A stretch of 64,000 nucleotides of DNA, from sequence record OM319461.1; one strand, written 5' to 3'. Below the pieces are notes generated by a model that saw only the letters and a program-made list of their open reading frames with translations, searched no databases and was not told where the DNA came from. This document shows positions 22,020 through 44,258 of this stretch, piece by piece. Made by a program: the position numbers and the translations under genes. The stretch's first letter is position 1. Each line of letters begins with the position of its first letter.

Positions 22020-22050
22020 TTTGATTTACCTGGTTTCGGATAAAAAGAAT

Positions 22051-22074
22051 AAGAGGAGCCGAGAGGCCCCTCTT
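22051..22074 (-). terminator. intrinsic terminator
   Basis: aagagg-a-gcc-gaga-ggc-c-cctctt with an A-tract on its left. Confidence 0.6.
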
Positions 22075-22079
22075 GTGTT

Positions 22080-23045: not shown

Positions 23046-23337
23046 ATTTGTTTTCCTCTCAGGAAGTTAAAGAAGATGCCCTCGGCACCACTATTAGAAA
23101 AGACAGAGATTANTTNCCGGCGTNTNTTGCTCGACAANCCTCAAGGTCTTGGATNGANTCATGATAGCAATTATANGTTTTACCGNCGACTTTTATATCG
23201 TGGCTNTGTCTTTTCTTGCNATCTTGTGTNCTTTTTCNGATTACNAAAGGNATGNTNNTNTANGNCTTTCCANCAATNTTTACTNTGGNCATTGTATANN
23301 CTCCATGCTATGTGATTATANTGTCATAATCCACATT

Positions 23338-23367
23338 GGTAATATAGANNACAAAAAAGAATGAGAC
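23338..23367 (-). promoter_or_regulatory. phage early promoter (TATATTAC core)
   Basis: The reverse complement of ggtaatataga contains an exact TATATTAC; it overlaps the terminator at the end of the giant gene. Confidence 0.55.
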
Positions 23368-23387
23368 TGCCCGAAGGCAGNCTCATT
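23360..23387 (-). terminator. intrinsic terminator, UUCG loop
   Basis: aatgag-a-ctgcc-cgaa-ggcag-n-ctcatt just after the stop at 23401. Confidence 0.8.
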
Positions 23388-23400
23388 AAAGGTTATTAAG

Positions 23401-26400
23401 TTAACAAGNAACACCCCATTGTGGNTGTAGTGCCGCGTTACCNGCAAAGCCCGCATTCAAGTCGAAACTTGTNGGAGCTACNGTTATCTTNGGAANACAC
23501 CANCNAGAGATNTCTTGGTTCATGCNAGGTTGCTCCAGAGAACATACCTGCCATGTNTGTAACTTCAGTAAANGTCCANGTAANAGGAANTGCATTGAAC
23601 GANGNNGCATCAGCAAACATGTAAGACATGTTCGTTNCTTTACCNGTTTGCCAGAAGTCNATNCCNNTNCCAGTAAACGCNGTTGCNCCANNGAACATTT
23701 CGCTCATNTCAAGNACTTCACCAAAGCTNAACCACANCATGTCTNGATCAAACTTAGGCGCGTTCTTNAACATTGCCTTNGCNTTNGTAATCGANNCAGT
23801 CTGTAGNGATACTNCTTGGTNAAAGATNGAAGCACCTTCNAACATAGACTCTGCGTNTTNNAGTGCNTTNGTACTTGCCCAGTTTANCATCGCNCCNTTN
23901 ACNCCNTCTGCCGAGCCGTTGTTAAACGCCACTGCATCATGGAAGATNAANGANAGGTCNGTTGCCTTNGTGAACTGAAGTGANGCTACGTTTTGGTTAA
24001 ACATTGCAGCTTCACTNAACATTTCNTTNGCAGTAGTNACATTACCNACNTCGAANGGAACNNCTTGGTTGAACGATNCNGCATGACAGAACATNCCNTT
24101 CNTACTTTCAACNNCAGCTGTATTCCAAGTCAGTGGGTTNTCACTTACACCTGGAGCNGANCCNTTGTTAAACACGAGAGCTTCTTTAAAGACGCTNGNC
24201 ATACTTATCAACNTTNGCNGTATCCCANTGATTCAANTCTTGGTTAAAGACNGAAGCACCNAGGAACATAGACNTGATGTCTGTNCCGGCCTTAGCAAAG
24301 GTCATGTTAGGCAATGGTTGGTTGAANGNCGTAGCNCTCTGGAAGACCTGGGTCTGTGNNNNAGAGTTAGCAAAGTTGATAGTCAATGGATTATCACTTG
24401 CTCCCGCNNCNGANCCNTTGTTAAACGCTGTTGCNCCATTNAACATCGAACGAACCGCNCNAACNGNNGAGAAGTCNAGGTTNTTGACGTCNTGGTTAAA
24501 CGATGTAGCATTNCTNAAGAAGAAGCTTACATCAAACGCTTTAGGGAANGTCCAGTTCGTTAGTGGTTGGTTAAACGCAGTTGCTCCNNGGAATACACCT
24601 TGCATGTATCCACCTTCCACTGTACTCCANCTNCCNACAGGCTGNTTAAAGCTTGTTGCGCCAGAGAACATGTTGTAGAAGTTAGTACAACGTGACATNT
24701 CCCATGNATCAATCTTACCNTTAAACGCGGTTGCACGTTCAAAGATAGCTGCTGCNCGAGTAGGAGCNAANCCAACCCAGCTTTCNANGTCNNGGTTAAA
24801 NGCTTTCGCATCNGTAAACACACGGTCTGCNTTTTCTACTGCTGANAGATCCCAACCAGAGATNTCTTGGTTGAAGTTTGCAGTGTCTCTNAAGATACCT
24901 GCGATCGATNTCAGATGNGCAGTTGCCCANGNTGNCATGTCACTCAGGATAAAGTCTTCACCAGNCAANGCATATTCAGCCGAAGTCGAGAANGTCATGT
25001 CAGTGTANNCNGCACGACCACCACAAGGACCAGANGGAATAGAATCATCACCAGANCCATCAGGTCTGATTACAACCGCACNCCATTTAGGTTTGTACGT
25101 GTTGCTGNTGAATTTCNTCCANAGTTCTTGACCGCCNGNATTAGCCAAGCGAGCAAAGTGNGCNTTACCGATTGTTGGGTATTCTACGATNACCTCACAA
25201 GCAGNAGTTACNCCNGCNACCTCGAAGCTTCCTCCACTAGTCANTTCTAGNGCACCAACACCATTGCTATCGACTTGGTANCTAAAGCCNTTGCCAAGAA
25301 CCGCATCNTTACCATTGNCNGTCATGTCCTCAATANAGCGAACTGTTTGACCTGCTNCNGTAACNGGAACNGTCTTAGCNNNNTCNTGCCACATGCGTGA
25401 TGTNTCTTGCATGTCGAANGCCGCTAGCATGCCTGTAGTATCGATGGTTGTTGTAGGTGCTTTAGTACAGCCTGCCATGTTAGCCCAATCAGGCAATTTC
25501 GCAGGTTGAGTAGCAATAGGTGCACCAGTCGCAAACGCGGTTGGTTCAGTTGTGATGTTTGGTACACACCAACCAGAGATATCCGCATCCATACTGTTCG
25601 CACCGCCGAACATGTTGGACATGTTGGTAGCACTACTGAAGTCCCAACAATTCAATGCCTTGTTGATACTTGTGTTACGGAAGATACGTGTAAAGTCAGT
25701 GATGTTAGAAACATCCCAGTTATCTAGGCCCTTACCAGTGAATGCCATAGCAATCCAGAATAGACCCGTTAGTTTCGTTGCTGATGGTACAAGCAGTTCG
25801 CTAACGTCCGCATCGTAGATGCTACAACGATATAGCATATCTTCATAGCTATCTAATACAGGAGCCGTCATCTTGATTGGTTGGTTTAACTTAAAACATT
25901 CTGCAAACATACGTTTAACGTTTGTAGCAGTCGGTAAGTTAAGTTCCATTGGTACGCCGACATTGTCAAACTCACGACAGTAGCCAAACATCGTATTGAT
26001 GTTATCGCCGCCGATTTGTCCGATGCCATTGATGTTTTGGTTGAACACATGACAGTGACTGAACATAAATGCCGTTGCTGTTGCATTCGATAAGTCAAAC
26101 GAACTGATGTCTTGGTTAAAGGCGTTCGCGTTGTTAAACATACTCATGAAGTTTGTACCCGCAGAGGTATCAAAGCTCAATGGTTTGTCATTACCAACAG
26201 TCGAGCCGTTGTTAAACACCTTAGCTTGCAAGAACATAAAGCTGAAGTTCGTGTTCTTACTTGTGTCCCATCCACTTAGGTCTTGGTTAAAGGCCCAACA
26301 TGCACGGAACGCCGAAGACATGTTTGTTGCGTTCTTCGTATCCCAACCTGAAACATCTTGGTTAAAGACTTTACAGTAACCAAACACACCGTTCATGTCG

Positions 26401-29400
26401 ACAACATTACCTACATCCCAATTACTTACGTCTTGGTTGAAGGACTCTGCTTCATAGAACAGTTTTGCAATAGTAGTAACTTGAGACAGATCCCATGATG
26501 TTAGAGGTACACCAGATAGGCCCGCTGCCTCGCCGTTGTTAAATTTGATCGCACCTTCCAACATAGACGCTAGGCGTGCATTACCAGCAATGTTCCAACC
26601 AGAAATATCGCGGTTGAAGGCAGCTGCATCATAGAACAAGAACTCTAAGTTAGCACCATCTTGAATTGTCCAGTTCATGTTCGGGTTATCACCGTTGTTA
26701 AACACGGTAGTTGCGCGGAACATGTTACTAAACGTAGTTACGTTACTTACATCCCAGTTGCCCACATCGACGTTCATCGAGTTAGCATCATGGAAGACAC
26801 TGATCATGTTGCTTACGCCAGACACATCCCAATCAAGTACAGAGGCTTCGCCAGGAGCTTTGCCGTTGTTCCAGTTGCGTGCGCGTTGGAACATGTTCTT
26901 GATTTCAGTTACGCCAGACATATCCCAATCAGATAGGTCGCCATTGAACTGTTCTTCGTTGTAGAACAAGTAAGCCGTACTCGTTGCTTTCGTGCCGTCA
27001 TATGTAATACATTGTTTACCACCTAGTGTGTCACCGAAGCCAGAAGCCGTAACTACAATAGGACCAAATTCTTGGCCGTTACCAAATGCACGGTTATAGA
27101 ACGAAAGTCCGGCGGCATTTGCTAAGTGTGGAATGAACGTATCACCGATGTTCGGTAGAATGAACGCAATATCTGCTGCATCAGTAATAGTCGGTACTTT
27201 TAATGGGTTGCTCAATCCGATAAAGATACACCCAGTACCATTGCTGTCTACGCCGTAACGAGCGTTGCTGCCCGAGAACTCTGCGTGGTTGTCATTACCA
27301 GACAAGTCGGTAATACCACGAACAACTTGACCTGCTGCTGTAACAGGAATTGTGCGTGCCGCATCCTGGAACAACGTACTGATGTCACGTGGGTCAAACA
27401 TAGCCAACATATTGTCAGCTGTAATACCACCGCCTGTGGTACAAGCAACACCCCAGTTTGGACCTAAGCCTACAGCGTTAACCGGAGAGTTAGTATCGAA
27501 GTTTAGAGGCTCACTAGCAATGTTGTTACCAACACACCAAGGCGAGATATTTTGACTAAAGGCTGCTGCATCACGGAACATACCCACCATGTTTGTTACG
27601 TTAGATACATTCCAACATGGCATTGGTTGGTTAAATGCCAATGCGCCACGGAACATTTCTTCCATATCCAAACAGGCTTCTGGGTTCCAACCAGATACAG
27701 ATTGGTTAAATGCCTCTGCATCCATAAACATGCGCGCCATTGTCGTCACTAGAGATACGTCCCAATGAGCCAATGACTGGTTGAATACGGCTGCACCATT
27801 AAACACGTCGCTTAGATCTGTAACAGCCGCAGGTAGTGTCATGTTACCAAGTGGTTGGTTGTATGACGCTGCTCTGTACATAAAGCCAGCCATGTTTTCA
27901 ACTTTACTGAAGTCCCAAGTATCCACGACTCCATTAAAGGCAGATGCACCACCAAACATGAAGCTCATGTCAACGACATTTTCCATTGACCATGCAGAGA
28001 TAACTTGGTTGAACTTAGCTGCATCAGAGAACATACGTTCTGTTGTAGTTGCAGTTGTCATTGTCCATCCAGTAATAGCTGTGTTGAATTCAGAAGCACC
28101 ACGGAACATATCCGAGAAGTCTTCACCGACATTCGGAGCCAACGCACTCACGTTCTGATTGAAAGCAATCGCTTCACAGAACATACCATGTAAGTTTTTA
28201 CAAACAGGTAGTACGAAAGAACTTCCGAATGCCGTATTAAATGCCCATGTACCACGGAACGCTTCGGCTACAGATAGAACTGCCGAAGTATTAATGTCAA
28301 CGGTACTGTTGAACGCTACTGCATCTTTCAGAATACGTTCGATAGTCGTTAGACTTGTGGTTGTTGTCCATGTTAATGGTCGGTTGAATGTTTGTGCGCC
28401 ATGGAACATATCGTTCATGTTTAGTGCGGCACTTACATTCCATCCAGCTACCGGTTGATCGAACACGGTTGCTCCCATAAACATTTCAGAGTAGTCAGTC
28501 ACCTTATCCATAACAAGGCTAGTTACTGGTTGGTTGAACGTAGTTGCATCTTTGAACATTGCTTTCGCAGTAGTCAATTCAGCTGTATTCCAACCCACAA
28601 GGGCACTATTGTAACTTGTAGCACCAGAGAACATAGATTCCATGGTTGTTACTTTGCTTACATCCCAAGCAGAGATGTCACCTGTGAATGCCGCAGCATC
28701 CTTGAACATAAAGCTCATGTCTGTGATAGAGACTGTAACCCAATCACTAATATCTTGATTGAATGAAGTTTCACCAGAGAACGTATGCGCCAATGAAGTT
28801 GTTACTCCGTCGGTGTATTGAATACACTCGAAGCCATTAACTGTGTTACCAGAACCAGATGCAGTAATGATCATACCAGCTAGGTTATGTGTAGCAGGTT
28901 TACCCCAATACTCGATACCAGCAGGATCTGCATCACGTTCGACAAAGGTAGTACCTACCCCAGGAATCAAGAATGCAATGTCTGCATCTACTGTGATGCC
29001 GGCCACTGTAGCCAAGGTATTGTCAGCTAACTCAATGTAACCGTTTGTACCATCTACCATGTAAGTAGCCGTACCAGTAAAGACAAGGTCGTTGCCATTG
29101 CCTGAACTATCCTCTACTACTGCGACTGTTTGACCAGCTGCGGTAACAGGAGAAGTTTTCGCTACGTCTTGGAATAGATGTTCGGTACTTGCCATTAGGT
29201 ATTGACCAAGCATGTTGTCGCCTGACGCAGTACCATTAACACATACTTCACCCCAACGTGGCTTATTGCCTGCCAATGCATCTAGTGCAGAGTCTTTGGC
29301 AAAGTCAGTCGGTTCTGACGGAATAGAGTTTACACACCAACCGCCGATGTAGCGATCAAAGTCTGTTGCTCCAGAGAACATCTCAACCATTGTTGTAATT

Positions 29401-32400
29401 GATGCTGTGTTCCAACAACCGATGTTTTGGTTGAAGGCACTTGCACCTGCAAACATACCCGAAGCGATTGCGACGTTAGAAACATCCCAAGTGCCAATAG
29501 GCTGGTTGAAAGCAACTGCGTTACGGAACATGTCTTGGGTAGTTTCTGCCGCAGACATACTCAAGTTACGTAGTCCAATGTTCAAACTAGCACAATCGCG
29601 GAACAATCCAGTAAACGTAGTTACTGTAGATGTGTTCATCGTTGCGTCTACACCGCCGTTGTTTAACAGAGCACAGCCAGCGAACATTTCTGTTACGTCA
29701 GTCACACCAGTTAAGTCATAAGACAATACGGCCGCATTTAGTTTAGAACAGTCTTTGTACATACGTTCAGTTGAAGTAACACCAGAGAAGTCCGGAACAG
29801 CCAACACTGCATTCAAGTCAGTACAGCCTTCGAACATACCAGTTACTTTGGTCAACGATGACATGATAAAGGTCATTGTACCTAGAACACCAGGCGCTTT
29901 ACCATTGTTAAACTTCACAGCATCGCGGAACATGTGCGTTGTGTCAGTAACAGCATTGAAGAGAACCGTATCGATCGATTGGTTAAAGTTACTTGCACCA
30001 TCAAATGCTTCTACAGCACTGTCTTTAATCATAAAGCCAGTAATGTCACAGTTGAAGGAAGCTGCATCTTTAAATACACGCTCGAACGAAGTCAATGCCG
30101 GAGTTGCCCATGGCATTGCTGGACCTTCTGAACCACCCAATACACCGTTGTTAAATGCCGAAGCACCATTAAACGCATCGTTGATTCGTTCAACCTTAGC
30201 AGGAATCCAAGATACAATCGAGCCGTTAAAGGACGTTGCGTCTTTGAAGATTGCTTGCATGTTAGTTACTTCGCGTACATCCCAGCCACCGATGTTACAG
30301 TTAAAGCCAGAAGCACCCTCGAAAGCACTACTCATGTTTTGCACGGTTGACGTATCCCAGTTTAATACTGGGCCTGCTGTACCTGCACTTGCGCCCGAGT
30401 TAAATTCCGGAGCAAGATAGAACATACTCGCCATGTCGAACAGGACACTAAATGTCCAGTCAGATACATTGCCGTTAAAGTTCGTTGCACCACGGAACAT
30501 AAACGATGTGTTTCCACAAGACGTCAAGTCCCATCCATCTACTTTCGGATTCATTTCTGAACGTGCAAACATACCACTAGCAGTAACAACTTTGCTCATG
30601 TCAAAGCCAGTTAGATCTGGATTCCAAACACCGGTATTGGCAAACATGCTCGTTACCGAAGTAACTTTGCTTGTGTCAAAGTTGGTTAGTTCACCAGACA
30701 TTGCCTTGGCACCGTCGAACATGTTGTTCATTGTACCAGCTGCTGTTGTCGTCCAACCGGATAGGTCAGAGTTAAACAATGCTGCACCTTGGAATGTTCC
30801 GTTAAAGTCAATAACCTTACTTACATCCCATGTCGAAACATCAGCTGTGCCTTCTGAATTCTTAAAGGTATCTTTAAGAGAAACCACATCAGCAGTATTC
30901 CATGTTGATAGATCTGCTTTGATTGCTTTCGTATCTTCAAATAGATGCGCTAGGTTAGTAACTGTTACACCAGAGAATGCCGTACACTCTGCACCAGTAA
31001 TCGTATCACCAGCGGCTTCTGTTGTGTACAGAATCTGAGAAACAACCAACTGCTCAGCTTTACCCCAGAATTCACCGTTACCAGATGTATCTTCGATTGT
31101 AACTACAGCCGAACCTACCGATGGGATTGTGAAGCCCACATCAAATCGATTCATACCGATAGTTGCTACTTGAAGACTTACTGTAGACGGTACGATCAAG
31201 TAATGTAAACCATTGGTGTCTTTCTTAAGTGTTGCAGTACCGCCAACAAACACACCGTGATTACCATTGCCTGACATGTCTTCTAGAGCTGCTACAGCAC
31301 CGTCAACGACTGCCGGAGTAGTACGTGACGCATCAGAGAACAAACCTTGTCCATCGACAATCGGGAAGACTGCCTGAGTATCTGCCGAACCTAGAGAACC
31401 AGGTAGACATGTACCCCATGGTGGAAGTTGTCCTGCTGTTAAGCCAGAGTTTGTCGAGAACCCTGATGGCGTTGAACTGATCTTAGGTACACACCAGCCA
31501 GACAGAGATTGACTAAAGCTAGTAGCGCCTTCGAACATAATGTCCATCCGGAATGCTTCTGGTGTTTTCCAACAAGTCAATGGTTGGTTAAACAGTTTCG
31601 CATTTTGGAACATGTTGTTCATGCGTTCTGCACTAGTCACATTCCAACTGCCAACCGGGGAGTTGAATGCTTCGGCATCAGTGAACATGAAATCAAAGCG
31701 CTTAACGTTTCCAACATTCCATGTTAACGGATTGCTATTGTCACCAACTGCTGCACCGTTATTGAACATTGTTGCTTCTTTGAACATATGGTTCATACCA
31801 ACAACGTTGCTCAAGTCCCAAGCATTTAGGTTCTGGTTAAACGCAGTGTTCATTGAGAACATGTAGTCAGTTGCAGTAACGTTAGACATATCCCACGCAG
31901 AGATATCGTGGTTCCATGTACTTAAGCCGAACATAGATTCAGTAGTTTCGAACGACGTGGTTACCCACTTGTCCAAAGGCTGATTAAACGCGGTAGCTTC
32001 GTAGAACATACCACCTGGGTTGGTGATAGTAGAAACATCCCATGCGTTCAGTGGTTGGTTGAATGCCGTTGCTGCCGTAAACATGTAGCTCGCATCTAGC
32101 ACGCCATTCATGTCCCAGCTACTGATGTCTTGGTTAAATACTTTCGCGTACGAGAACATGTAACTTGTATCAGTTGCTTCGGTAGTCTTCCAGTTACTTA
32201 GATCTTGGTTGAATGCCTCTGTGGATTCAAACATGAAACTAAAGACTTGTACTTTGCTTACATCCCAGTTGTTTAGCGGCTGGTTAAAGTTCGTACAGTT
32301 TGAGAACATACCAGAGATCGATGTTGCCGAACTCATGTCCCACATGTCTAAAGGCTGATTGAAGTTTGAACAGTTAACAAACATCCAATCAAATGTTTCA

Positions 32401-35400
32401 ACCTTGCTTACATCCCAATGCGATAGATCTTGGTTAAAGTCAGCTTCGTCACCAAATAGCGATTCTAGTGATGTTACTGTACCCTCTGCATAAGCCGCAC
32501 AATCAAAGCCACGAATGGTATTACCCGAACCTTGTTCAGTAATGATGATTGCACCTACATACAGATCTGCCCTTTTACCCCAGAACTCAACTGGACCAGC
32601 AGTACGAGAAACAAACGAGTCACCTACCCCTGGAATCAAGAACGCAATGTCATGACCAGTATTGATAGATGCTACTTCTATTTTCGCATTTTCTTTTACT
32701 TCAAGATAACCCAAGCCATTTACATCTTGACGGTAAACCGCATTGCCACCAGTAATGACAGCATGGTTACCATTACCTGAAACGTCGGCGATTGCCTTAA
32801 CAACATCACCAGGCGCAGTAACCGGAATAGTACGAGATTCATCTTTAAATAGAGAACTCATATCCATCGGGTTAAGGTTGGCCAGTTTGTTATCTGCCGA
32901 TACACCACCAGGAGGACAAGTACTCCACTGTGGCTGTACGTTTGCTTGGTTAACAAAGCTAGCTGGCGCACCAGTATCAAATGCTTCTGGTTTCGATGTG
33001 ATGTTTGTTACACACCAACCGGATAGGTCTTGCTCAAATGCACCTGCATCATGGAACATATGATCCATTAGGTTTGCACTTGTTGTTTTCCAACAGTTAA
33101 TGCGTTGGTTAAAGGCAAGCGCTTCGTGGAACATCCATGAGAAGTTACCTACCTTAGAAACATCCCAGCGACCGATAGGTTGGTTGAAGTTATCTGTTTG
33201 CTCGAACATGTTCGTTACGTTAACAGCAGACGAAGTATCCCAAGAGCCAATAGCACCATTAAAGATGCGTGCACCAGAGAACATCGCAGTAAACAGTTCT
33301 ACCTTGCCAGTATCCCATGTAGAGATATTACCAACAAAGTTTTCTGCATTCTGGAACGTAGAAGCCATGTCAGTAACAGATGACGTATCCCAGTTAACTA
33401 GGTCTTGACTAAACGCTGTAGCTCCTTCGAACATACTGCGGATAGTTGTTACCCCAGTCATTGTCCAACTGTCAAGTGGTTTGTTGAATGCAATCGCACC
33501 ACGGAACATTCCGGATGTGTTAGTACAAGCCGCCAAGTCCCAAGTATCTAACGGTTGGTCAAATACACGAGCATTGCGGAAAGTATCTTGCATTGCAACA
33601 ACATTACTTACATCCCAGTTGTTTAGTGGCTGGTTGAAAGAATGTGCATCTTGGAAGGTTCCCACCAATACACGCAGTGCGGTAGTAGTCCACCCACCGA
33701 TGTTTTGGTTAAACGATACTGCACGATTAAATGCCATCGCCATACTGGTAACTTTTGAAACATCCCACGTTGAGATATCTTGGTTGAATGCAGCAGCGCC
33801 CATGAAGATTGCCTGCATGTTAGTTAATACAGTAGTCGTCCATGTTAATGGTGCTGAGTTTGCACCTGCCGTTTCACCGTTGTTAAATGCTACTGCTCCA
33901 GCGAACATACCTTCCATCGTCACAACAGAAGAAACAACCCAGCTAGAGATATTCGCATTAAACGAACTAGCACCAGCGAACATACCAGATGTTGTTACTG
34001 CTGAACTCATATCCCATGCACTAATATCTTCGTTGAAGTTTACTGCGTTTTGGAATGTGCCTTCAAAGTTAGTTACACCTGTTGTGTTCAAGCCCGCTAG
34101 GGTACCGATGTTGTCTTCACCAGCAAACAAGTTTTGGAATGTTGTATTTCGGTTAGTGTAAGTTGGACCACACGAACCCATTGCCGTTCTCAGTGCTGCT
34201 TCATCAGCAGTACTCGGAGCAATCGTAATCGCCGAAACAAGGAAGGCCTCATCGCGATCTTCGCCAAAGATTTCACCTGTGGCTGTGTCACGAACAATTG
34301 AAACAATACCGTTGTTTACTAGGTTGAATACAATTAATGCACCGTCATTCATTCCGCCATATTGGATCGATTGACCATCGGCGAACTCTAGGTAACCATT
34401 ACCGTTTGCATCTTCACGATAAGTTGGAGCACTTGAAGCTTCACCCCACACCACATCATTGCCGTTGCCTGAACTATCTTCCAATAGCATTACCTTTTGA
34501 CCAGAAGTAGTTACCGGAGTAGTACCTGCTGCATCTTGGTAGAACCATTGTTTTTCAAAGCCAAGGTAAGTAGCAATAGAACCAGCTGCTGCCAAACCAC
34601 GTGAACAATCAGAACGACATGGATCTGGTGCTAGGCCCCATTGTGGTGGATTAGCTACATTAACAGCACCGAACAGATTTGGCTCTGCTGGTATATGCTG
34701 TACATCCCAACCTGCAAGATATGCGGTCATTGCATCAGCACCGTTAAAGAGGTTCGTCATGTCGGTTACGTTACTCACGTCCCAACGACAAAGCATCTTG
34801 TTGAATGCAGTTGCGAATTCAAACATACCGCGCATCGCTGTAAATGCAGAAGTATTCCACTTCTCAAGTTCGTTCACGCCACCGTTATCATACGATGTTG
34901 CGTTACGGAACATGTTGGTTACATTAGCAACTTTTGCCATATTCCAGTTGGCTAGGTTTTGGTTAAATGCGGATGCACCGTGGAACATAGATTCCATTGT
35001 GGTCACATTGCCAACATTCCAATTGCCAATCGGTTGGTCAAACACAGAAACAGACGAGTTAGAGTAGAACATAAAGCTCATGTCTGTTACGTTGCCAGTA
35101 GACCAATCAGAAACGTTCTGGTTAAACGCACGAGCGTCTTGGAACATTCTGTGTAGCGATGTAACGTTTGCTACTGTAAAGTTACCTGATGCCTCTGTGA
35201 GAGGCTGTAAACCATTGTTAAACGCATAAGCACCACGGAATAGTGAGTCCATTAGTGTTACACGAGCAGTATTCCAAGTTGCAATGTTCTTGTTGAATGC
35301 ACGAGCATCCATGAACATACCAGTCATGTTAATCGCAGAAGCACCTGTATAGAACACCCAGTTGCTTACGATAGCATTGAAGTTCAATGCTGCTTGGAAC

Positions 35401-38400
35401 ATGTGAACAAAGTTAGTACATGCAGACCAATCCATGTTAGCCATAGATGAACTTGCATTGTTAAAGCGACTTGCATCTTTAAACGCACCTTCGGCAGTTG
35501 TTACCGCAGCAACATCCCATCCGGCGATATTTTGGTTAAAGTTACTTGCCCCTTCGAACATATAACTGATGTCAGTTACTTTGCTCATATCCCAAGGTAA
35601 TGGCTGGTTAAATGCCGTTGCGTTTTTGAACATCCATTTTGTTGTCGTTAGTGCTGAGGTTACCCAGCTTGACATTGGTTGGCCGTACGCAGTTGCTCCT
35701 TGGAACATCCCCATTGCGTTTGTTAGTGCCTGTACATTCCACGCATCAATCGACTTGTTAAATGCACCCGCATCTTTAAATGCATAGGTAGCGTTTGTTA
35801 GTTTGCCTGTGTTCCATGCTGATAGATCCAGATTCATAGAAGCACAGCCGTTGAACATTGACTGGATCGAAGTAACTTCACGCATGTCCCATGTTTGCAC
35901 ATCGACATTATTAAAGTTCAAGTTACCAGAGAAAAAGTCGTTCATCGTTGCCTGAGTATTAGCCGCATAAACTTTAGCACGTTGTGACATCGTGTTATTA
36001 GCAGACGTCTTAGATGCTGAGTCTAGTGTTGTGGCAATACCTGCCATATCGGTTAGTTTGTGCACACCGACTGCGTTTGGAGTAAAGTAACGCTTAATAC
36101 CTTTACCGCCATAAAAGTCGATGTTGGTTGTTGTCATCTTACCACGGCCAACTACACCGATGATGTGATCCGCACGGCCATTGTAATCCACTACCATGTC
36201 GTGGTTAGGGCCGAACTCAAGATAACCAATGCCATTATCGTCTTCACGGTAGATCGGACGCTTAGCGTTATCTGGTTGTTGTAGATGACGTAGGTTACCA
36301 GTTAAGTCCATTATGAACGCAACAGGGTCACCCGGGTTTGCCACTGGGATTGTACGACCGATATCTTGCCACATGCAGTCTTTATCAGAACCACTATGGA
36401 AGAACTCAGAACGCTCAGTTAGACAGAAGCCACCCCAATAAGGTTGTTTTGCTGCATCGCCAGCCATACCTGCACCAGCATCAAAGTCAATTGGCTTAAC
36501 TGAGATTTGCTGTACACACCATCGAGAGATATCTTGGTCGAATGCAGTTGCACCATCAAACATATAGTCCATGGTCAAAACAGCACTTACGCGCCAATCG
36601 CCAAGGTCAGAGTTAAATAGTGGAGCCGAACGGAACATGTTTGTCATGTTCGTTACTTTGCGAACATCCCATGATGACAAGTCGCTGTTGAATAGCAATG
36701 CACCATAGAACAAGTCAGCCATAGAAACAACACTGCTTGTATCCCAACCACTCAAGTCAGAAACAAACTTAGCCGCACTCGTAAACGTACCCATCATAGA
36801 AACAGGAACATCTGTACGGATTGTCCATCCAGACAAATCAGACTCGAAGTTACTACAGTCTTTGAAAGCACGGTTAAAGCTACGTACCTTTGACGTTACC
36901 CAGCCACGCAAGTCAGACGTAAATGAGCTAGCACCATGGAAAGCATCATCCAAGAATTGTACATTGTCAGTTTTCCAACCAGACAAATCTTGATTGAATG
37001 CAACGGCACCCATAAACGTTTCTGTTAAGTCACCGACAATTGTCGTATCCCATCCAGAAATATCCTCATTGAATCGAACTGCACCTTTAAACAAACCACG
37101 CAAAGAAGCAATTGAGTTCAGACGGAAGTTAGACATACCGCCAGTTGCGTATTCTTCGTTTGCTAGCAAGTAAGAAATACTGCTTTGTAGTTCGGTCGTA
37201 TATGCGTCTGCACGTAACTGCATTGCATCACGGATAGAGCTTAGTTCTTGTGCTGTAAGTGCTGTGTCGGTTGCCACTGCCTCACCGGCCCAAATCCAAA
37301 CCTTTTCAGAACCACCTGCTGCCTTGATACCAAGTTTAGCTGGTCCATTTGGTTGGCCTTCCCATTGAGGAACACCGCGTCCAGCGATTGCCACCCAGTT
37401 ACGAGAACTGTCAGTAATCGAAGGCACAACAAAATGCTCATCGTTCGTGAAGACTAAGTAGCCGCGGCCGTTTACATCTTCTTGGTAAAGAGGACGTTTT
37501 GTTACATCTGCCTGAATACCATTGTTACCCTTACCAGAGATATCCCCGATAAATGCAACGCGCTCACCAGGAGCAGGTACACCAGAGCCATCTACGTTAA
37601 TGCCTAGTAGCTGTTTGATAGATGGATCATAATAACCATCCAACAATTCGCCCACACAAGGCTGGCCGAACAGAGGAACTTCTGTAGCATCCAGTTGACT
37701 GCTAACACCAAAGTCTACTGCTTCATCCGGAGTCACGTTCTTAACACACCACGTAATCAGGTTGTGATTAAACATGTATGCATTGTTGAACATGCGCATC
37801 ATACTTGTAACGTTTACTGTATCCCATAGAGAGATATCGTAGTTAAAGATAGATGCTTCACGGAACATTTCGTCCATGAGGATTTCAGAAGCATTAAACT
37901 GCCACGTAGCGATGTTATGGTTAAACGAGTCAGCTCCATAGAACATACCACGGAAGTCAGTAACGGCTTCTACATTCCAATTATCCAGGTCTTGTGCAAA
38001 GTCCTCGGCATCACGGAACATAAAGCGCATCGTTTTCGCAGACGACGTATCGAAGTGATTCAAAGGCTGGTTAAACACAGGCGTTGACATGAACATGCCT
38101 TCGAAGTTTTCTACGTTCGTAGTAACCCAGCTTGTTAGCAGTTGGTTAAATACTTCTGTGTTTTGGAACATACGTGCCATGTTACTGGCACTACTTGTAT
38201 CCCACCCCAATAGTGGTTGGTTAAAGCGAACCGCACTGCGGAAAGCTTCTTTAAATAACGTTACGTTACTTACATCCCAATTACCAATCGGTTGGTTAAA
38301 CTGACGGGCATTGAAGAACATACCTTCCATTTTCAGAAGTGAGGACGTATCCCAAGCAGTAATGTCACCGTTGAAGTCTGTTGCGTTTTGGAACATATAA

Positions 38401-41400
38401 GAAGCATCAAGCAATGCACTCATGTCCCAAGGCAGAGGCTGATTGAAATCAACAGCATCTTTAAACATACCGACCGCAGAGCGCAACGAAGAAGTATCCC
38501 ATGACGCCATTGGACGATTGTAGATTTCACAACCCGAGAACAGAAAGTCTGCATGTACAACACCAGACATGTTCCAGCTATCAATATCCCAGTCAAACTC
38601 CGTACGGTCTTCTAGAGCACAGCTAATATCACTTACTGCGCCAGGGGCGTAAAGTTTTGCCCAGCGACCTGCGGCTTTTGAAAGAACCAGAATATCAGTA
38701 GCAATCGGAGCACCGAAGTAAACAATCAACTGACCCATCTTGCGGGTAGCGCCTGCTTTTTCACGTGCTTTGAAATCAATCTTGAACGTAGTAGATGGAA
38801 CCGTAATGTAGTCACCCCAACCACCAACAGATGGAATGTTGTTAACCCATACACCAGTGCCAGAAACACCACTAACTACCAACTCGGTACTATCAGGGAA
38901 TTCAAGGTAACCTAAACCATCGGCGTCTTGACGATAAATCGGACGTTTTGCAACATCAGGTTGAATCGCATCCAAGCCTAGTTTACCGATGTCTTCTAAA
39001 ACAGCTACGCGATCACCAGGAACCGGGTTTGTTGTCTTAGCTTCGTCAGTAAATACTTTTGTGACGTCACCGGCATCATACCACAAGTCAGCCAAGTCAG
39101 CCAAACAGCGAGCACCCCAGATAGGCATGAAGTCAGACTGTAGCGGAGAACCAAACGAGAACATCGTTGGACCAGTTACCGGAATCTGCTTAACACACCA
39201 TGGAGTCAAGTCTTGGTTAAACACTGTCGCATTAAAGAACATGCGATCAAAGTCAGTAACCGTTGTTGTATTCCAGTTAGCCAAGTCTTGGTTGAAGACA
39301 AGGGCTGATTGGAACATCATTTTAAATGTCTTAGCCGATTCAGTACGCCATAGATTAAGTGGCTGGTTGAATGCTGCCGCACCAGAGAACGTACGATAGA
39401 AAGTTTCTACAAAACGCACATCCCAAGATTGAATCGGTTGGTTAAAGGCAATTGCCCCATCGAACACGCCGGCCATGTTGGTAACTGTAGTAGTAACCCA
39501 GTTATCCAATGATTGGTTGAATGCTACACTACCAAAGAACATTTCTTCGATTGTTAAAGCAGCTGACAAATCAAAATGATTCAGAGCACTATTGAATACA
39601 ACGGCACGTGCAAAGGCACGCTTAAAGTTTTCGACGCCAGAAGTATCCCACGTTGTCAAATCAGAGTTAAATTGATTCGAGTCTTCAAAGATCGATTCAA
39701 TGCTTTTAACTGTCGGACCAATCAAGTCAGCAACTGAGCTATTAAACAACGATGCTGCTTTAAATGTCGCCACTGCACTTTCAAGTACAGGAGCTGGACC
39801 AACCAACGGACGATTGAACGTTGCCGCACCGTGGAACATGCCATCGATCGTAATTGTCGATGAAAGATCAAAAGGTACTTGGCTATTGAACGCACGAGCG
39901 TCTTTGAACATATGTGCAAACGTAGTTACTTTTGCAGTATCCCATGGAAGATCGTAATTGAAAACCGAAGCGCCTTCAAATACACTTTCCATGCTAGTTA
40001 CATTAGACGTGTCCCATCCACCGATGTTTTGGTTGAATGCCTTAGCGCCAGCAAAAGCAAAGTCCATCTTTTCAAGCGACGTTGTTACCCAGCCAGAGAT
40101 ATCTTGGTTGAAAACTAACGTGTCTTTGAATAGGCCGACAATACTCTTGACCATGTCCATTTTCCAGCCAGAGATATCTTCATTGAAAGTATTCAAACCT
40201 TCTAGATAGTAATCCAGGCTAGTTACAGTACCTTGGTCGTAAAGAGTATAAGACTCTCCAACATACTCACTTGCCACGAGTTTCATCTCTGGCGTACAAG
40301 TATCTGCAAGAGCTACGAATTGACCGACGTAACGTTTTTGTTCTCCGGCTACACGAGGACCGATTGTTGTATCCGTATCGGTTACATGCAATACACCGAT
40401 ACCAGGGATAGTTTCCCACGTATGGTAATTATCACCGCCGTCTTGGTAAGACATGAACTCATCGTTATTGAATTCCAAATAGCCATTACCGTTAACGTCT
40501 TCGCGATAAGTCGGAGCAGTAGCCAATGCCGCCGTAGCGTGATTGCCTTTTGTTGTCAAGTCCAGCATCAAGCGAACTTTGTCGCCAGGCGTGGTAACCG
40601 GTACTTTACCTTCGGTATCTTGGAACAATGTACCAATCAAGTTAGCATTGTAAAAAGAATGTGCAAAGTACTTAAGACATGGCATTGCCCACTGAGGTTG
40701 CAACGCATCCACATCCTGCCAGCCAGCCTGTGTGTTATCATCAAAGCCATTTGGCTCATCAAGAATTAAACGCACACACCAAGCAGAAAGGTCGTATGAG
40801 AACGAACTAGCGCCTGAGAACATCTCAACCATATTTGTAGCTAAGTCAGTTTGCCACAGTGAGATATCTTGATTGAAAGCAGCTGCACCACGGAATGCTG
40901 CATTGAAGTTTGTTACCTTGCTTACATCCCAAGTAGTAACATTACCATCAAACACAATCGCGCCATCAAAGATACCGGCCATGCTTGTTACATTGCCAGT
41001 TTCAAAATGATCGAGGTCTTGATTGAACTTAACTGCACCCGCTGCGAAGTAACTCATGTCAGTTACATCATGAGTACGCCATCCAGTTAGCGGCTGGTTA
41101 AACTCAAGAGCACCACGGAACATAGCAGTCAGTTTTGTTGCACGTGATAAACGGAAGCTAGTTACAGGTTGGTTGAATACAGCCGCCCCGTCAAACATAT
41201 AACTAACGTCAGCCGTCAGACCTAAATCCCATCCAGAAAGCGAGCCATTGAATGCTACTGCACCCTGGAACATCTGAGACACGTCTGAAACACCGAACAT
41301 TTCCCAGTTAAAGAGATGCTGGTTAAATGCAACCGCATTGCGGAACATAGCTTTCGCTACTTTTAAGTTTGCGAAGTCCCAGTTGTTTAGCGGTTGGTTG

Positions 41401-41600
41401 AATGCACTAGCACCGTCAAACATACTTGTTGTATGCGTAACAGTCTGCATGTCCCATGACTGAATCGGCTTGTTGAACAATGTCGCACCGGCAAACATAG
41501 ATGACAAGTTTGTTTTACCAAAGAGCTGCCAATGAGCAAGGTCTTGATTAAACTCTGTGTCATTTAGGAATATGTATGCCAAAGAAGCAATCGTGTCAGA
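23401..41600 (-). repeat. DUF285 / PARCEL-type 25-27 aa repeats in 11 blocks
   Basis: Recurring MF..A..FNQ.L..WDVS.VT.M units; roughly 150 by length estimate, not counted. Confidence 0.9.
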
Positions 41601-42599
41601 TGGATAGCTATTGATAGCAAGTTCGTTGACTTCATCAAAGATCCCATTGAGTTCGTCGTCAAGTATATCTTGAGTCAAGAACAATACTTCGTTTAAGTTC
41701 CATGTTTTGTTTTCGCTTGGGAAGCGTGGGCCGATGCGATGCTCAGTAATGTCTTTGTCTTGGTTGAAGTAAGCCAAAGCACCAGTACCAGGAACACCCA
41801 GAATCTCATGTACTGCGGCTTTGTTTTCCGGAGTCTTTAAGATAAGGTGTTGGTCACCTGAGAAACGAATATAGCCGCTACCAGTTGCATCTTCAAGATA
41901 CGTCGGTTTTAGGTCGGCATCGTCCTGACGCAATACTGCATCACCGACAATGGACTTAACAAGACCTACTCGGTCACCGGCCTTACATGGCACACTGCCT
42001 TCACCATCAACAAAACAAACAAGGTCTTGATTGAATTGGAAGCGATAGCCACTATAGCCCTTTTCAAAATAAGCATCCACTTCACCCATGTTTTCAAACG
42101 GGTCGAATGCTTCTGGTACACCGCCCAAAAGAACGAACGCACCTTCTTCGATAGTTTCAAAGCGCTCTTCGCCTAAAACGTCCAGGTAGACAGTAGCAGA
42201 GTCAATATGACGCCCACTTGTAACTGCGGTCCACTGGACTGGATCAAATACACCAGCCTCTACCGGACGATTAGTGCCGAGTAGATTACCCAGCGCATCT
42301 AAAACGAAACTGTCTTCTTCGTAGTCACGCATAGGTTCATGACGTGCAACAAAGCCAGTTTGTAAAACTATCTCTTCCCATGCTTCTGGATTAAATTCTC
42401 CAGCCAGGATAAGTTTCTTTGAACGATAAACTCGATCATCATGAAAAACATAGCTTCCTTTTTGGAAGTTGTATGTAGGCAGGAAGTTAGGTATCGTGGC
42501 AGGTACGTCTTGCGCATTACGGTCTGCCCAGATAATCCAGTTTGTTGAATCCTGACTTCCTTGATGATGGAACAATCGAATAATGGTTGGTAAAGCCAT
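23401..42599 (-). CDS. giant (about 6,400 aa) modular DUF285/BspA-like repeat protein, putative virion fibre or adhesin
   Basis: 6137-aa ORF 24186-42599 with a GGAG site. Repeats continue in ORF 23438-24211 after a one-base shift (GTT-G-ATA-AGT-ATG) and then in the frame of 23401-23616, ending with the same cap motif (NQ.IS.WC...PQWGV.C-stop). Confidence 0.85.
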
Positions 42600-42611
42600 T
42601 AGTATTCTCCG

Positions 42612-44258
42612 TTAATATGTAATATGGACAATAGTGCCCGAGGACCAAAGATTTTTTCCATACGTTAGATTGAACGACGGGAAGAAGTACATCGTCTTGA
42701 TAACTTGTCTTGGGCTAATTTTTTCCCAGTTACCTTCCGAGTACGGACCAAGGCTACTTGCCTTTTTATGTCGAACAATTTCTTCGGATGGATCGAGGAC
42801 GAACATGTCCGGACTATATTGCATGTTTGCATTATGTTTCGGCACCAAGGCCGTTCCGGTTTGTAGTTCCTCCCAGTCTCGAAGGTCCCAAATTGAACCA
42901 CCGACTATCTCTGATAGCACAGTAGTAAACTTTTTCGTAAGTGTGTCCCACCCAAGGATACTAGGAGTACCTGTAACGCCCGCTGTGAGGTAATTACAGA
43001 CAACCGAATAGATTACACCATCGGATTCAAAGACACTCCACTGAGACGGACCTTGCGTCACAATGCCTTTGAATGGAACAAACGTTTCTGAAATTGCATC
43101 CCAAAAGAAGGTAACCGATAACGAGTCCGTATTGTTTTCACTTGTGCGGAAAACCGGAACGTTCATATAAAGGACATCGCCTTCTTCAAAGAAAGAAAGA
43201 TTGAGTACGGTACCACGTATGTTCGTGTCCGTACCTTTGTGGTCAAACTGGTCAGTTAAATCACGAACCGGAGACAAAGCTCCATTGTCGAACTTAACCA
43301 GTTTTAACCAATTGCTTTTTGTAGCCAGTATCCCATAGTAGCGACTATCAATCTCACGATAAGCAAAATGAGTTACTTGGTCATCGACAACATAGTCATC
43401 GACAAATCGCAGTGTTTTTGTTACATTGTCAAACAAGAGCGTTGACATCGTTGTCTTTCTACGATACTCATCATAACGAGCAAACGTAAGATAGATATTA
43501 CCTGCAATTACCTGTGTGGTCACATGCATTACTCGTTCAGTATCTTCGATCGTATATGTCGATACTGACTGTACTGTTTTTGACAACGGGTTAAACTGTG
43601 CAATGCTGATTTCTTGTTGTCCGTGCATCCCACTTACCAGGAAGTGTCGAGTACCCAGAGAAAAATAATAAAGAAAGTCGCAGGCTGCAAACTCAACGTA
43701 TGGTTCTAACACACCAGCATCAGTCAACTCATAGATTTCCGTTTTCGCTGTTTGTAACTTACCGGGAGCTCCGGTAATGAATACGCGTTCTCGGTCATGG
43801 ATTGCCACGATGTCTTCTAGTGCATGCGTCAGAGTATGAGTCAGTGTCAAACTACCCGTGGTATTGTCCCAGGCATAAACATAAAGATTACCCCCACCAA
43901 CAGAGGTAGGTGGTACTTCTTGATATTCTACTCGACGTGACAGTATGTTGTTTGAACTTAAAAGGAACTGTTTTCCTTTTACAGTAATAACTTGTGCATC
44001 GTTGATGAACCCTGGATTAGGATATGCGATGGTCGTTAGTTCTGGACGTGCGTAACCCTGCTTGGGTGTATTTTTACAAAACAGTAAAGTTGCTGCATTC
44101 AGAGAGATAACGTCATCGGGCTTATAGCTTTTGGTTGGATCAAAAGGACCGATTTCTTTCGGTCTAGGTAACAATGACCCTTCTGTCCATACTACATAAG
44201 GCAATGGCTTTAAGCCCTTGTCTTCTTTGTGTAATCGGACCGTATACTTACAGAACAT
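42612..44258 (-). CDS. beta-propeller protein (EAR/EPTP-like) with CBM-like terminal modules
   Basis: Likely start MFCKYTV at 44258 after GAGGA (548 aa). Blade-like motifs QGPSQWSVFESDGVIYSVVCNY...SILGWD...KF and CDFLYYFSLGTRHFLVSG. Confidence 0.6.
   Translation of the reverse strand: MFCKYTVRLHKEDKGLKPLPYVVWTEGSLLPRPKEIGPFDPTKSYKPDDVISLNAATLLFCKNTPKQGYARPELTTIAYPNPGFINDAQVITVKGKQFLLSSNNILSRRVEYQEVPPTSVGGGNLYVYAWDNTTGSLTLTHTLTHALEDIVAIHDRERVFITGAPGKLQTAKTEIYELTDAGVLEPYVEFAACDFLYYFSLGTRHFLVSGMHGQQEISIAQFNPLSKTVQSVSTYTIEDTERVMHVTTQVIAGNIYLTFARYDEYRRKTTMSTLLFDNVTKTLRFVDDYVVDDQVTHFAYREIDSRYYGILATKSNWLKLVKFDNGALSPVRDLTDQFDHKGTDTNIRGTVLNLSFFEEGDVLYMNVPVFRTSENNTDSLSVTFFWDAISETFVPFKGIVTQGPSQWSVFESDGVIYSVVCNYLTAGVTGTPSILGWDTLTKKFTTVLSEIVGGSIWDLRDWEELQTGTALVPKHNANMQYSPDMFVLDPSEEIVRHKKASSLGPYSEGNWEKISPRQVIKTMYFFPSFNLTYGKNLWSSGTIVHITY

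What the first reader, a model, noticed from the sequence alone, without database searches (positions are those of the whole stretch)
23401..42599. 19-kb, about 6,400-aa modular repeat protein with 11 [spacer domain + DUF285 block + Cys cap] units
Seen: 11 spacer domains with consensus LFQD...PV...G..V..+.D.SG.GN.......Y..D..G.GYL.F (near 41900, 40550, 39000, 37550, 36300, 34450, 32800, 31300, 29100, 27300 and 25300). Each is followed by a block of DUF285-like repeats closed by WCV..I...P..F....P.WG..C. Module 5 lacks the first Cys (WDV) but gains a second just downstream (PCRSDC). Spacers 7-10 form a subgroup (DIAF.IP.VG, FWGK), with near-identical DNA at 32629-32652 and 28959-28982. Established: DUF285/PARCEL repeats occur in bacterial surface proteins and spread horizontally. 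Inference: a very long virion fibre or adhesin grown by module duplication, probably disulfide-capped; unusually large for a phage protein.
Basis: partly seen in the sequence, partly recalled or inferred. Interest (0 to 1): 0.8.

Follow-up and report, generated by a model that had tools for sequence, protein, structure and literature searches.

The report
Giant modular repeat protein of jumbo vibriophage
A 19-kb gene of a jumbo Vibrio phage encodes a roughly 6,400-residue chain of 11 look-alike modules that is most likely an extracellular fibre or adhesin; the gene itself was already reported in a sister phage, but its detailed anatomy had not been worked out.

Summary
The window is Vibrio phage C-ZP2022 (OM319461.1, bases 62001-126000). 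On the minus strand, 23401-42599 carries one gene with a ~195-aa N-terminal domain and 11 modules. Each module is a ~150-aa beta-rich spacer, then 7-19 DUF285 units of 25 residues, then a two-cysteine cap.

In this record the gene is not one open frame. Two frameshifts lie in its N-rich 3' part and are probably assembly errors, because the sister phage vB_pir03 has an intact 6,417-aa CDS.

That orthologue was published in 2020 as a giant PARCEL/DUF285 ORF, so the gene itself is not new. New here:
- module lengths 1-6 are the same to within 1-3 residues in four phages;
- modules 7-9 are replaced (37-44% versus ~90% identity);
- dN/dS is 0.06;
- cap cysteines are lost or moved only in pairs;
- the spacer is distantly related to LamG-like proteins;
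- the N-terminal domain recurs in smaller DUF285 paralogues and, split, in the co-transcribed propeller neighbour.

Best reading: a disulfide-stabilised extracellular fibre or adhesin, probably virion-borne. Virion location is untested.

The parts
23401..42599 (-). Whole giant DUF285 gene (CZP2022_115 plus CZP2022_114 of OM319461.1). Broken in this record by two frameshifts in the N-rich 3' part. Stop codon at 23401-23403.
42015..42599 (-). N-terminal non-repeat domain (aa 1-195; the shared core is about 165 aa). It has no signal peptide and no Pfam, PHROG or PDB match. It is shared with the N-termini of smaller spacer+DUF285 paralogues and, split in two, with the upstream neighbour.
40677..42014 (-). 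Module 1: spacer 41592-42014; DUF285 block 40782-41591; Cys cap 40677-40781
39105..40676 (-). Module 2: spacer 40221-40676; DUF285 block 39201-40220; Cys cap 39105-39200
37656..39104 (-). Module 3: spacer 38631-39104; DUF285 block 37752-38630; Cys cap 37656-37751
36423..37655 (-). Module 4, the shortest (7 units): spacer 37182-37655; DUF285 block 36522-37181; Cys cap 36423-36521. Modelled by AlphaFold2 with pLDDT 90.
34605..36422 (-). Module 5: spacer 35949-36422; DUF285 block 34710-35948; variant cap 34605-34709 (WDV in place of WCV, with two Cys four residues apart downstream)
32916..34604 (-). Module 6: spacer 34143-34604; DUF285 block 33018-34142; Cys cap 32916-33017. Identity to pir03 drops to 68% here.
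31407..32915 (-). Module 7 (variable region): spacer 32472-32915; DUF285 block 31497-32471; Cys cap 31407-31496
29241..31406 (-). Module 8 (variable region; the longest, 19 units): spacer 30957-31406; DUF285 block 29340-30956; Cys cap 29241-29339
27441..29240 (-). Module 9 (variable region): spacer 28797-29240; DUF285 block 27540-28796; Cys cap 27441-27539
25467..27440 (-). Module 10: spacer 26982-27440; DUF285 block 25572-26981; Cys cap 25467-25571
23404..25466 (-). Module 11: spacer 24984-25466; DUF285 block; terminal Cys cap 23404-23502. This module holds both frameshifts and many Ns.
42607..42610 (-). GGAG ribosome-binding site 8 nt before the ATG. Only 12 nt separate the start from the stop of the upstream gene.
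42612..44258 (-). Upstream neighbour (CZP2022_116, 548 aa), called an EAR-like beta-propeller in the pir03 paper. It carries the giant protein's N-terminal domain split between its own N- and C-termini and is probably co-transcribed.
23355..23380 (-). Terminator-like GC hairpin with a T-rich tail, about 20 nt after the stop of the full-length gene

Best explanation
The gene encodes a single ~690-kDa, very acidic polypeptide that works outside the cell as a long, segmented fibre or adhesin, most likely carried on the virion.

Shown:
- A ~165-195-aa N-terminal domain is followed by 11 modules.
- In each module a beta-rich ~150-aa spacer ends in a helix and leads into an LRR-like solenoid of 7-19 DUF285 units. 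A ~35-aa cap with a conserved Cys pair closes the solenoid.
- The scaffold positions of the 25-residue unit are nearly fixed, while the other positions vary.
- The N-terminal half (modules 1-6) has the same module lengths, within 1-3 residues, in four phages.
- The C-terminal half is variable, and modules 7-9 are replaced wholesale between sister phages.

Inferred:
- The Cys pairs form disulfides after lysis.
- The N-terminal domain docks the protein on the particle. It recurs on several differently tipped proteins of these phages, as anchor domains of receptor-binding proteins do.
- The conserved half acts as a stalk.
- The variable solenoid faces and LamG-related spacers bind surface ligands of the host or its habitat.
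For: - Identity and intactness: pir03 has an intact 6,417-aa CDS. P0002 (6,272 aa) and sm033 have the same 11-spacer layout or its first 9 modules.
- Selection: dN/dS is 0.06 at dS ~1 over modules 1-5.
- Fold: the AlphaFold2 model of module 4 has pLDDT 90 and pTM 0.85. It has 8 strands plus a helix, then the solenoid, then the cap. Foldseek matches viral 'BspA family LRR surface proteins' at E 1e-13 to 1e-17; LRR proteins are the best but weak PDB hits.
- Surface variability: unit scaffold positions differ in 0-5% of units between orthologues, other positions in 18-25%.
None is left with an odd Cys.
- No signal peptide and no RTX motifs; pI 4.4.
- Mosaicism: 88-95% identity to pir03 in modules 1-5, 10 and 11, against 37-44% in modules 7-9.
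- Shared N-terminal domain in P0122, P0126, P0144, P0178, SM033_00002/00003, a Yong-phage protein and the neighbour.
- The spacer's N-terminal half matches a ~260-aa family that hits phrog_10356 'virion structural protein' and, weakly, PF13385 LamG_3.
- Precedents: DUF285 proteins are packaged in AaV virions (PMC7507832). In the jumbo phages OBP and N1M2 the DUF285 gene lies between a virion structural gene and a baseplate gene.
- The gene forms a two-gene unit with its neighbour, bounded by terminator-like hairpins.
Against: - There are no virion proteomics or imaging for this phage group. The pir03 paper describes only head, neck, contractile tail and baseplate.
- The gene sits among helicase, DprA-like, repair-nuclease and terminase-like genes, not with the tail genes.
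- OBP_145 is annotated 'hypothetical', not 'virion structural'.
- The disulfides are inferred from two independent evolutionary events only. Model coordinates could not be inspected.
- The direct ConA-like fold test of the spacer failed.
- No ligand is known for any DUF285 protein.
Confidence: 0.5

Rival explanations
1. It is an extracellular protein that is not part of the particle. It would be made in the infected cell, freed at lysis or left on cell debris, and would act as a free adhesin, a decoy, or a matrix- or aggregate-binding protein.
For: - Cys-pair conservation and the lack of an export signal fit release by lysis as well as they fit virion carriage.
- The gene lies outside the structural clusters.
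- The pir03 description mentions no fibres.
Against: - The N-terminal domain is shared by several differently tipped proteins, and a module length pattern fixed in four phages is easier to explain by docking onto a defined structure.
- DUF285 proteins are found in AaV virions.
Confidence: 0.22
2. It is an intracellular scaffold. The LRR-like arrays would bind host or phage proteins inside the infected cell, for example as a sponge against host defence factors or as an organiser of replication.
For: - Its neighbours are replication and repair genes.
- LRR-type solenoids are general protein-binding scaffolds (established knowledge).
Against: - Paired conservation of cap cysteines is not expected in a reducing cytoplasm.
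- Homologues are annotated as cell-surface proteins with T9SS and PKD domains.
- A 19-kb gene is very costly for an intracellular binder.
Confidence: 0.1
3. It is not a working gene: either a mis-assembled or decaying repeat array, or selfish PARCEL DNA without a protein function. The frameshifts would then be real.
For: - There are two frameshifts and about 100 Ns in the gene as deposited.
- PARCELs have been linked to mobile DNA (PMC2996958).
Against: - The orthologue pir03 has an intact 19,254-nt CDS, and the Logan protein P0002 is an uninterrupted 6,272 aa.
- dN/dS is 0.06.
- The DNA repeats are only 60-80% alike, so collapse or chimerism is unlikely.
- 71% of the Ns are at third codon positions.
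- The helicase in another N-rich block is also frameshifted twice, which points to consensus quality.
- A terminator-like hairpin follows the full-length stop.
Confidence: 0.04

Closest known systems
ORF 200 of Vibrio phage vB_VhaM_pir03 (QNI21147.1, 6,417 aa), published as a 'putative PARCEL' gene (Misol et al. 2020, PMC7765460)
   Same: It is the orthologue. It has the same 11 modules, the same lengths for modules 1-6, 88-95% identity in modules 1-5, 10 and 11, and the same neighbours.
   Different: Modules 7-9 are only 37-44% identical. pir03 cap 7 has lost both Cys. The pir03 gene is intact, whereas the C-ZP2022 record has two frameshifts. The paper reported only the size and the DUF285 hit, not the module anatomy.
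[quoted passage not shown]
   Same: They have long arrays of the same 25-residue DUF285 unit (35-44% identity over the repeat part), are similar in size, and are presumed to sit on the cell surface.
   Different: The bacterial proteins intersperse PKD, cadherin-like and other domains and end in T9SS sorting domains. They cover only about 55-60% of a phage module, meaning the repeats and not the spacer. The two-Cys cap motif was found in only 2 of 118.
DUF285 proteins of other large viruses: OBP_145 and N1M2_118 of phiKZ-like jumbo phages; AaV_052 and AaV_382 of Aureococcus anophagefferens virus
   Same: They have the same repeat fold (Foldseek E 1e-15 to 1e-17). The AaV proteins were found in virions. 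The phage genes lie next to baseplate genes.
   Different: They are much smaller (140-2,000 aa) and carry one or a few solenoids. There is no sign of the 11-fold spacer, solenoid and cap module or of the shared N-terminal domain.
Sets of phage receptor-binding proteins that share an N-terminal anchor domain (multi-tailspike and branched-fibre phages; established knowledge, not tested here)
   Same: One conserved N-terminal domain sits on several proteins with different distal parts, and the distal parts are mosaic while the proximal parts are conserved.
   Different: The known examples are trimeric beta-helix or fibre proteins encoded in tail modules. Here the body is an LRR-like solenoid chain, the oligomeric state is unknown, and the gene is not in the tail module.
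LamG_3 / concanavalin A-like domains (PF13385)
   Same: The first ~70 residues of the spacer match, at E down to 1e-20, a ~260-aa protein family. Ten of about 49 scanned members of that family hit PF13385, the best at 1.3e-5.
   Different: The spacer itself gives no Pfam hit, is about 40 residues shorter, ends in a helix, and gave no ConA-like fold match.

Membership tests
DUF285 / PARCEL / BspA-family repeat proteins (PF03382, TIGR02167) | Significant match to the PF03382 model | tested here: met
   931-1154 bits per third of the protein and 65 bits for the 3' fragment, against a cut-off of 25. NCBIfam PARCEL models also match.
DUF285 / PARCEL / BspA-family repeat proteins (PF03382, TIGR02167) | Tandem 25-residue units with conserved hydrophobic positions and variable hydrophilic positions | tested here: met
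   75-nt spacing of the DNA repeats. About 134 units in the long frame and 143-147 in the intact orthologues. Trp at unit position 3 in 80% of units, Phe at 15 in 98%, Ala at 18 in 85%, Phe at 21 in 89%; other positions are variable.
DUF285 / PARCEL / BspA-family repeat proteins (PF03382, TIGR02167) | Dyad symmetry of the repeat-coding DNA (the 'palindromic' in PARCEL) | tested here: not met
   Best self-to-reverse-complement match per 75-nt unit is 32.6, against 32.3 +/- 0.4 in shuffles. No DUF285-like units appear in antisense frames. The test is crude.
DUF285 / PARCEL / BspA-family repeat proteins (PF03382, TIGR02167) | Membrane or surface targeting (lipoprotein signal, T9SS domain or similar) | tested here: not met
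   The N-terminus has no hydrophobic signal-like stretch. No sorting-domain Pfam hit. The protein ends right after the last cap.
Leucine-rich-repeat fold | Solenoid fold matching solved LRR structures | tested here: inconclusive
   The model is confident (pLDDT 90), but the best PDB hits are weak: TLR9 at E 0.025 and Nogo receptor at 0.05. No PDB relative was found by sequence.
LamG / concanavalin A-like lectin domain (PF13385), for the spacer | Direct profile match | tested here: not met
   The spacers gave no Pfam, NCBIfam or PHROG hit.
LamG / concanavalin A-like lectin domain (PF13385), for the spacer | Homology through intermediate sequences | tested here: met
   The spacer profile finds 7,137 cluster representatives (E<=1e-3), mostly over profile positions 10-80. 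Ten of about 49 scanned ~260-aa members hit PF13385, the best at 1.3e-5.
LamG / concanavalin A-like lectin domain (PF13385), for the spacer | Jelly-roll beta-sandwich fold match | tested here: inconclusive
   The spacer-only model has pLDDT 73 and is poor in its second half. No PDB match has E<1. The whole-module search gives weak hits to ConA-like folds, and BFVD hits include proteins named LamG-like or ConA-like.
Phage tail fibre / receptor-binding protein | Presence in the virion | not testable with these tools
   No proteome of pir03, C-ZP2022 or sm033 was found.
Phage tail fibre / receptor-binding protein | Gene located in the tail or baseplate module | tested here: not met
   The neighbours are a helicase, a DprA-like protein, a repair exonuclease, a terminase-like ATPase and a UV endonuclease. 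The pir03 tail genes are ORFs 2-11 and 51-52.
Phage tail fibre / receptor-binding protein | Conserved proximal part, mosaic distal part, and an anchor domain shared among paralogues | tested here: met
T1SS-secreted giant RTX adhesins | RTX nonapeptide repeats and a C-terminal secretion signal | tested here: not met
   No GGxGxD motif. No such Pfam hit. The C-terminus is a Cys cap.

The most novel reading that the evidence does not exclude
This jumbo-vibriophage group may carry a previously undescribed kind of appendage system. It would be a family of proteins that share one ~165-aa docking domain: the 11-module, ~100-nm-scale DUF285 chain, the 1,100-1,200-aa two-module versions, and a propeller protein with the domain split around it. 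The giant member's distal modules would be exchanged as cassettes to retarget binding to host or habitat surfaces.
Probability: 0.3. Interest if true: 0.7.

Novelty: new variant of a known kind. Interest (0 to 1): 0.5.

Why it matters
DUF285/PARCEL repeats are widespread in bacteria, algae, giant viruses and, as one search shows, mostly jumbo phages. Yet the searches here found no solved structure for them and no paper reporting a ligand. Here the repeat occurs in a tractable lytic phage as a strongly conserved protein under purifying selection, with a clear module grammar and a natural 'swap' of three modules between sister phages that were isolated on different Vibrio species. If the protein is on the virion, it would be one of the largest phage structural proteins and a new fibre design: a chain of LRR-like solenoids. 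The shared N-terminal domain would then mark further appendage proteins in these genomes.

Tried and rejected
- PDB sequence searches with the spacer profile, a DUF285 block and the N-terminal domain gave nothing significant.
- Foldseek against PDB with the whole module and with the spacer alone gave nothing below E 1e-3.
- Pfam and PHROGs on the N-terminal 200 aa gave nothing, so my impression of a chitin-binding-like (CBM5/12-type) motif is unsupported.
- A word-based search for the N-terminal domain through P0122 returned only P0122 itself.
The scan with the N-terminal domain found no relative.
- P0002 is too long for the contig look-up.
- The PARCEL dyad-symmetry test was negative.
- The RTX-adhesin idea was rejected.
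- The chimeric-assembly idea was rejected.
- No paper on C-ZP2022 was found. The jumbo-phage comparative survey PMC7824862 does not mention DUF285, LRR or BspA.
- Model coordinates are not exposed by the tools, so Cys-Cys distances and module length could not be measured.
Full report
**Source and state of the sequence.** The window is 98.6-98.9% identical to Vibrio phage C-ZP2022 (OM319461.1, 287,943 bp, host V. parahaemolyticus). The only differences are Ns, and the window corresponds to record bases 62001-126000. The deposited record itself carries the Ns. There are 1,079 in the window, grouped in blocks. Within genes about 70% of them fall on third codon positions, so they look like unresolved variant calls in a consensus.

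The record annotates the gene as two CDSs, CZP2022_115 and CZP2022_114, both 'hypothetical'. The sister phage vB_pir03 (MT811961.1, host V. harveyi) has one intact CDS of 19,254 nt, or 6,417 aa. When the pir03 C-terminus is aligned to the window, it is covered by three colinear pieces in three frames. That means two frameshifts, with outer bounds 23404-42599. The pir03 helicase likewise maps to three frames in another N-rich block of the window. I therefore regard the breaks as probable assembly artefacts.

One slip: my first script printed the raw DNA and translations around the end of the long frame before I had recognised it as a break. Later scripts printed only counts and outer bounds.

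**The observation.**
- An HMM made from ten window spacers finds eleven copies in C-ZP2022, in pir03 and in a third orthologue, P0002 (6,272 aa, from a Logan assembly).
- Each spacer is followed by DUF285 repeats.
- Each repeat block ends in a ~35-residue cap holding two Cys.
- The eleventh cap is the very end of the protein.
- The details about module 5, the spacer 7-10 subgroup and the short near-identical DNA stretch are all confirmed.

The repeat unit has 25 residues and a 75-nt period. There are about 134 units in the long frame and 143-147 in the intact orthologues, with 7-19 per module.

**Is it a real, functional gene?** Yes.
- Between C-ZP2022 and pir03, dS is about 1 while dN/dS is 0.06 over modules 1-5.
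- The DNA copies of the repeat are only 60-80% alike, so repeat collapse or chimeric assembly is implausible.
- Four independent assemblies share the layout: C-ZP2022, pir03, P0002 and vB_VpaM_sm033.
- The gene has a GGAG site 8 nt before its ATG and starts 12 nt after the stop of the upstream gene.
- A GC hairpin with a T-rich tail follows the full-length stop.
- In pir03 a 10-bp hairpin separates the helicase from the upstream gene.

The upstream gene and the giant gene therefore look like one two-gene transcription unit.

**Structure.** It gave pLDDT 90 and pTM 0.85. After the cap comes a beta-rich spacer of about eight strands that ends in a 16-residue helix, then a regular solenoid, then the next cap.
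- Against PDB nothing passes 1e-3. LRR proteins (TLR9, Nogo receptor) are the best hits.
- No PDB chain is related by sequence. I found no solved structure for the DUF285 fold.

Within the unit, the aromatic and aliphatic scaffold positions differ between orthologues in 0-5% of units. The intervening positions differ in 18-25%. This is the pattern of a fixed core with a variable surface.

- 29 have both Cys;
- cap 5 lacks the first Cys but has an extra Cys four residues after the second, in all three phages;
- pir03 cap 7 has lost both.

No cap has an unpaired Cys. These are only two independent events, but both keep parity, which is what a disulfide predicts. The cap motif is rare in bacterial giant DUF285 proteins (2 of 118). 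It is present in the small spacer-bearing homologues.

**The spacer.** The spacers themselves give no hit in Pfam, NCBIfam, PHROGs or PDB. A profile of the eleven spacers, searched against 1.84 billion cluster representatives, finds 7,137 proteins (E<=1e-3). These fall into two groups.
- A few are small [spacer + DUF285] proteins.
- Most are ~260-aa proteins that match only the first ~70 spacer residues. These have no Pfam domain at normal thresholds but hit phrog_10356 ('virion structural protein'). Ten of about 49 scanned hit PF13385 (LamG_3, concanavalin A-like), the best at 1.3e-5.

One such protein lies in a bacterial chromosome, in a three-gene cassette beside polysaccharide-synthesis genes. 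The spacer is therefore a shortened, diverged relative of a LamG-like family by transitive homology. The direct fold test did not confirm this. The spacer-only model reached pLDDT 73 and gave no PDB match.

**Evolution of the modules.**
- Module lengths 607/527/483/410/604/563 are the same to within 1-3 residues in C-ZP2022, pir03, P0002 and sm033. This holds even though P0002 is only 41-59% identical.
- In a tree of 33 spacers, S1-S6 form clean orthologous triplets. S7-S11 form one clade with scrambled orthology.
- C-ZP2022 and pir03 are 88-95% identical in modules 1-5, 10 and 11, 68% in module 6 and only 37-44% in modules 7-9.
- The C-ZP2022 versions of modules 7-9 have no closer relative among the sequences gathered.

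A block of roughly 2,000 residues has therefore been replaced between two otherwise close phages that were isolated on different Vibrio species. In sm033 the gene is not annotated and runs into the end of the linear record with nine modules. The first CDS of that record carries four more modules and a terminal cap. The total may be 13, but that depends on how the record ends join.

**The N-terminal domain.** Residues 1 to about 165 match nothing in Pfam, PHROGs or PDB. An HMM of the domain finds it at the N-terminus of:
- the smaller spacer+DUF285 proteins P0122, P0144, P0178 and SM033_00003;
- P0126, which lies right after the RNR beta gene, as pir03 ORF 287 does, and appears to be its counterpart;
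- SM033_00002;
- a 586-aa protein of the Yong phages.

It also occurs in the 548-aa upstream neighbour, where it is split: its first part at the N-terminus and its second part at the C-terminus, with E 3e-18 for the whole protein. The pir03 authors called that neighbour EAR-like, meaning a beta-propeller. Pfam gives only a sub-threshold EPTP hit here. One domain on several proteins with different bodies is how anchor domains of receptor-binding proteins behave. That reading is inference.

**Context and precedents.** The neighbours are a helicase, a DprA-like protein, a repair exonuclease, a terminase-like ATPase and a UV endonuclease. This is not a tail module. The pir03 authors note that their genome is not modular overall, although the head and tail genes sit in subclusters.

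DUF285 repeats occur in 96 phage records. Synechococcus (43) and Prevotella (15) phage records make up most of them, and nearly all those listed are jumbo phages, including Aeromonas, Pseudomonas OBP, Klebsiella N1M2, Sphingomonas PAU and Serratia phages. In OBP and N1M2 the DUF285 gene lies between a virion structural gene and a baseplate gene. Two DUF285 proteins were found in purified AaV virions (PMC7507832). Giant DUF285 proteins of 3,400-7,900 aa are common in marine Bacteroidota, where they carry PKD and T9SS domains.

**What is known already.** Misol et al. 2020 (PMC7765460) reported pir03 ORF 200 as a 19,254-bp PARCEL gene 'not described in phages up to date'. They noted that its GC content matches the genome and gave no function, proteome or module analysis. 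The gene and its DUF285 nature are therefore published. The following are added here:
- the module grammar;
- the Cys-parity argument;
- the LamG link;
- the fixed proximal and swapped distal halves;
- the shared N-terminal domain;
- the two-gene unit.

**Verdict.** This is a real gene under strong purifying selection that encodes a giant modular DUF285 protein. It is most likely an extracellular, disulfide-stabilised fibre or adhesin, probably docked on the virion through its N-terminal domain, with confidence about 0.5. It is a new architectural variant of a known repeat-protein kind in an already reported gene. Interest is moderate (0.5).

Noticed in passing
window 1415-46940, in blocks (for example 1251-2500, 8251-13000, 15251-16500, 20001-25500, 44251-47000): There are 1,079 N bases, also present in the GenBank record. 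About 70% of those inside genes are at third codon positions, so they look like unresolved variant calls. Genes in these blocks tend to be frameshifted.
   Followed up: partly
window 44365-46334 (-): The DEAD-like helicase is annotated as three CDSs in C-ZP2022 but as one 656-aa CDS in pir03. The pir03 protein maps to three frames, which means two frameshifts and no in-frame stops. This lies in an N-rich block.
   Followed up: yes
window 42612-44258 (-): The upstream neighbour is a 548-aa propeller-like protein. It carries the giant protein's N-terminal domain split between its two ends, which is a domain-insertion architecture. This is conserved in pir03 and sm033.
   Followed up: partly
window 22080-23045 (-): A 321-aa protein matches terminase large-subunit ATPase families (phrog_32359, E 5e-21) just downstream of the giant gene. 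It is separate from the large terminase subunit that the pir03 paper identified (its ORF 57).
   Followed up: no
L007 20001-34800 and L012 13-7539 (OV032902.1, Vibrio phage vB_VpaM_sm033): The giant gene is unannotated in this record and runs off the linear end with 9 modules. The first CDS of the record has 4 more modules and a terminal cap. The total may be 13 modules (about 7,400 aa) if the ends join.
   Followed up: partly
L011 and L009 (Logan contig SRR13169044_26700, 71.7 kb): One jumbo-phage contig encodes a giant DUF285 gene (product over 5,300 aa, cut by the contig end), a small RHS/YD-shell protein and two further spacer+DUF285 proteins (P0122, P0126). All of these apart from the YD-shell protein and the cut gene, whose 5' end is missing, were found to carry the shared N-terminal domain.
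   Followed up: partly
L004-L006, 7738-9199: The ~260-aa LamG-like relative of the spacer (P0164) sits in a bacterial chromosome. It lies in a three-gene cassette (88, 268 and 131 aa) next to GDP-mannose and glycosyltransferase genes.
   Followed up: no
window 29755-30420, 30433-31038, 33481-34161, 40233-40769 (+): Antisense ORFs of 178-226 aa lie inside the giant gene. None carries DUF285-like units. They are probably by-products of the composition of the repeat-coding strand.
   Followed up: partly
window 23315-23342 (-): A sigma-70-like promoter match (10 of 12) lies just after the terminator-like hairpin, ahead of a small N-rich ORF (CZP2022_113) and the terminase-like gene.
   Followed up: no
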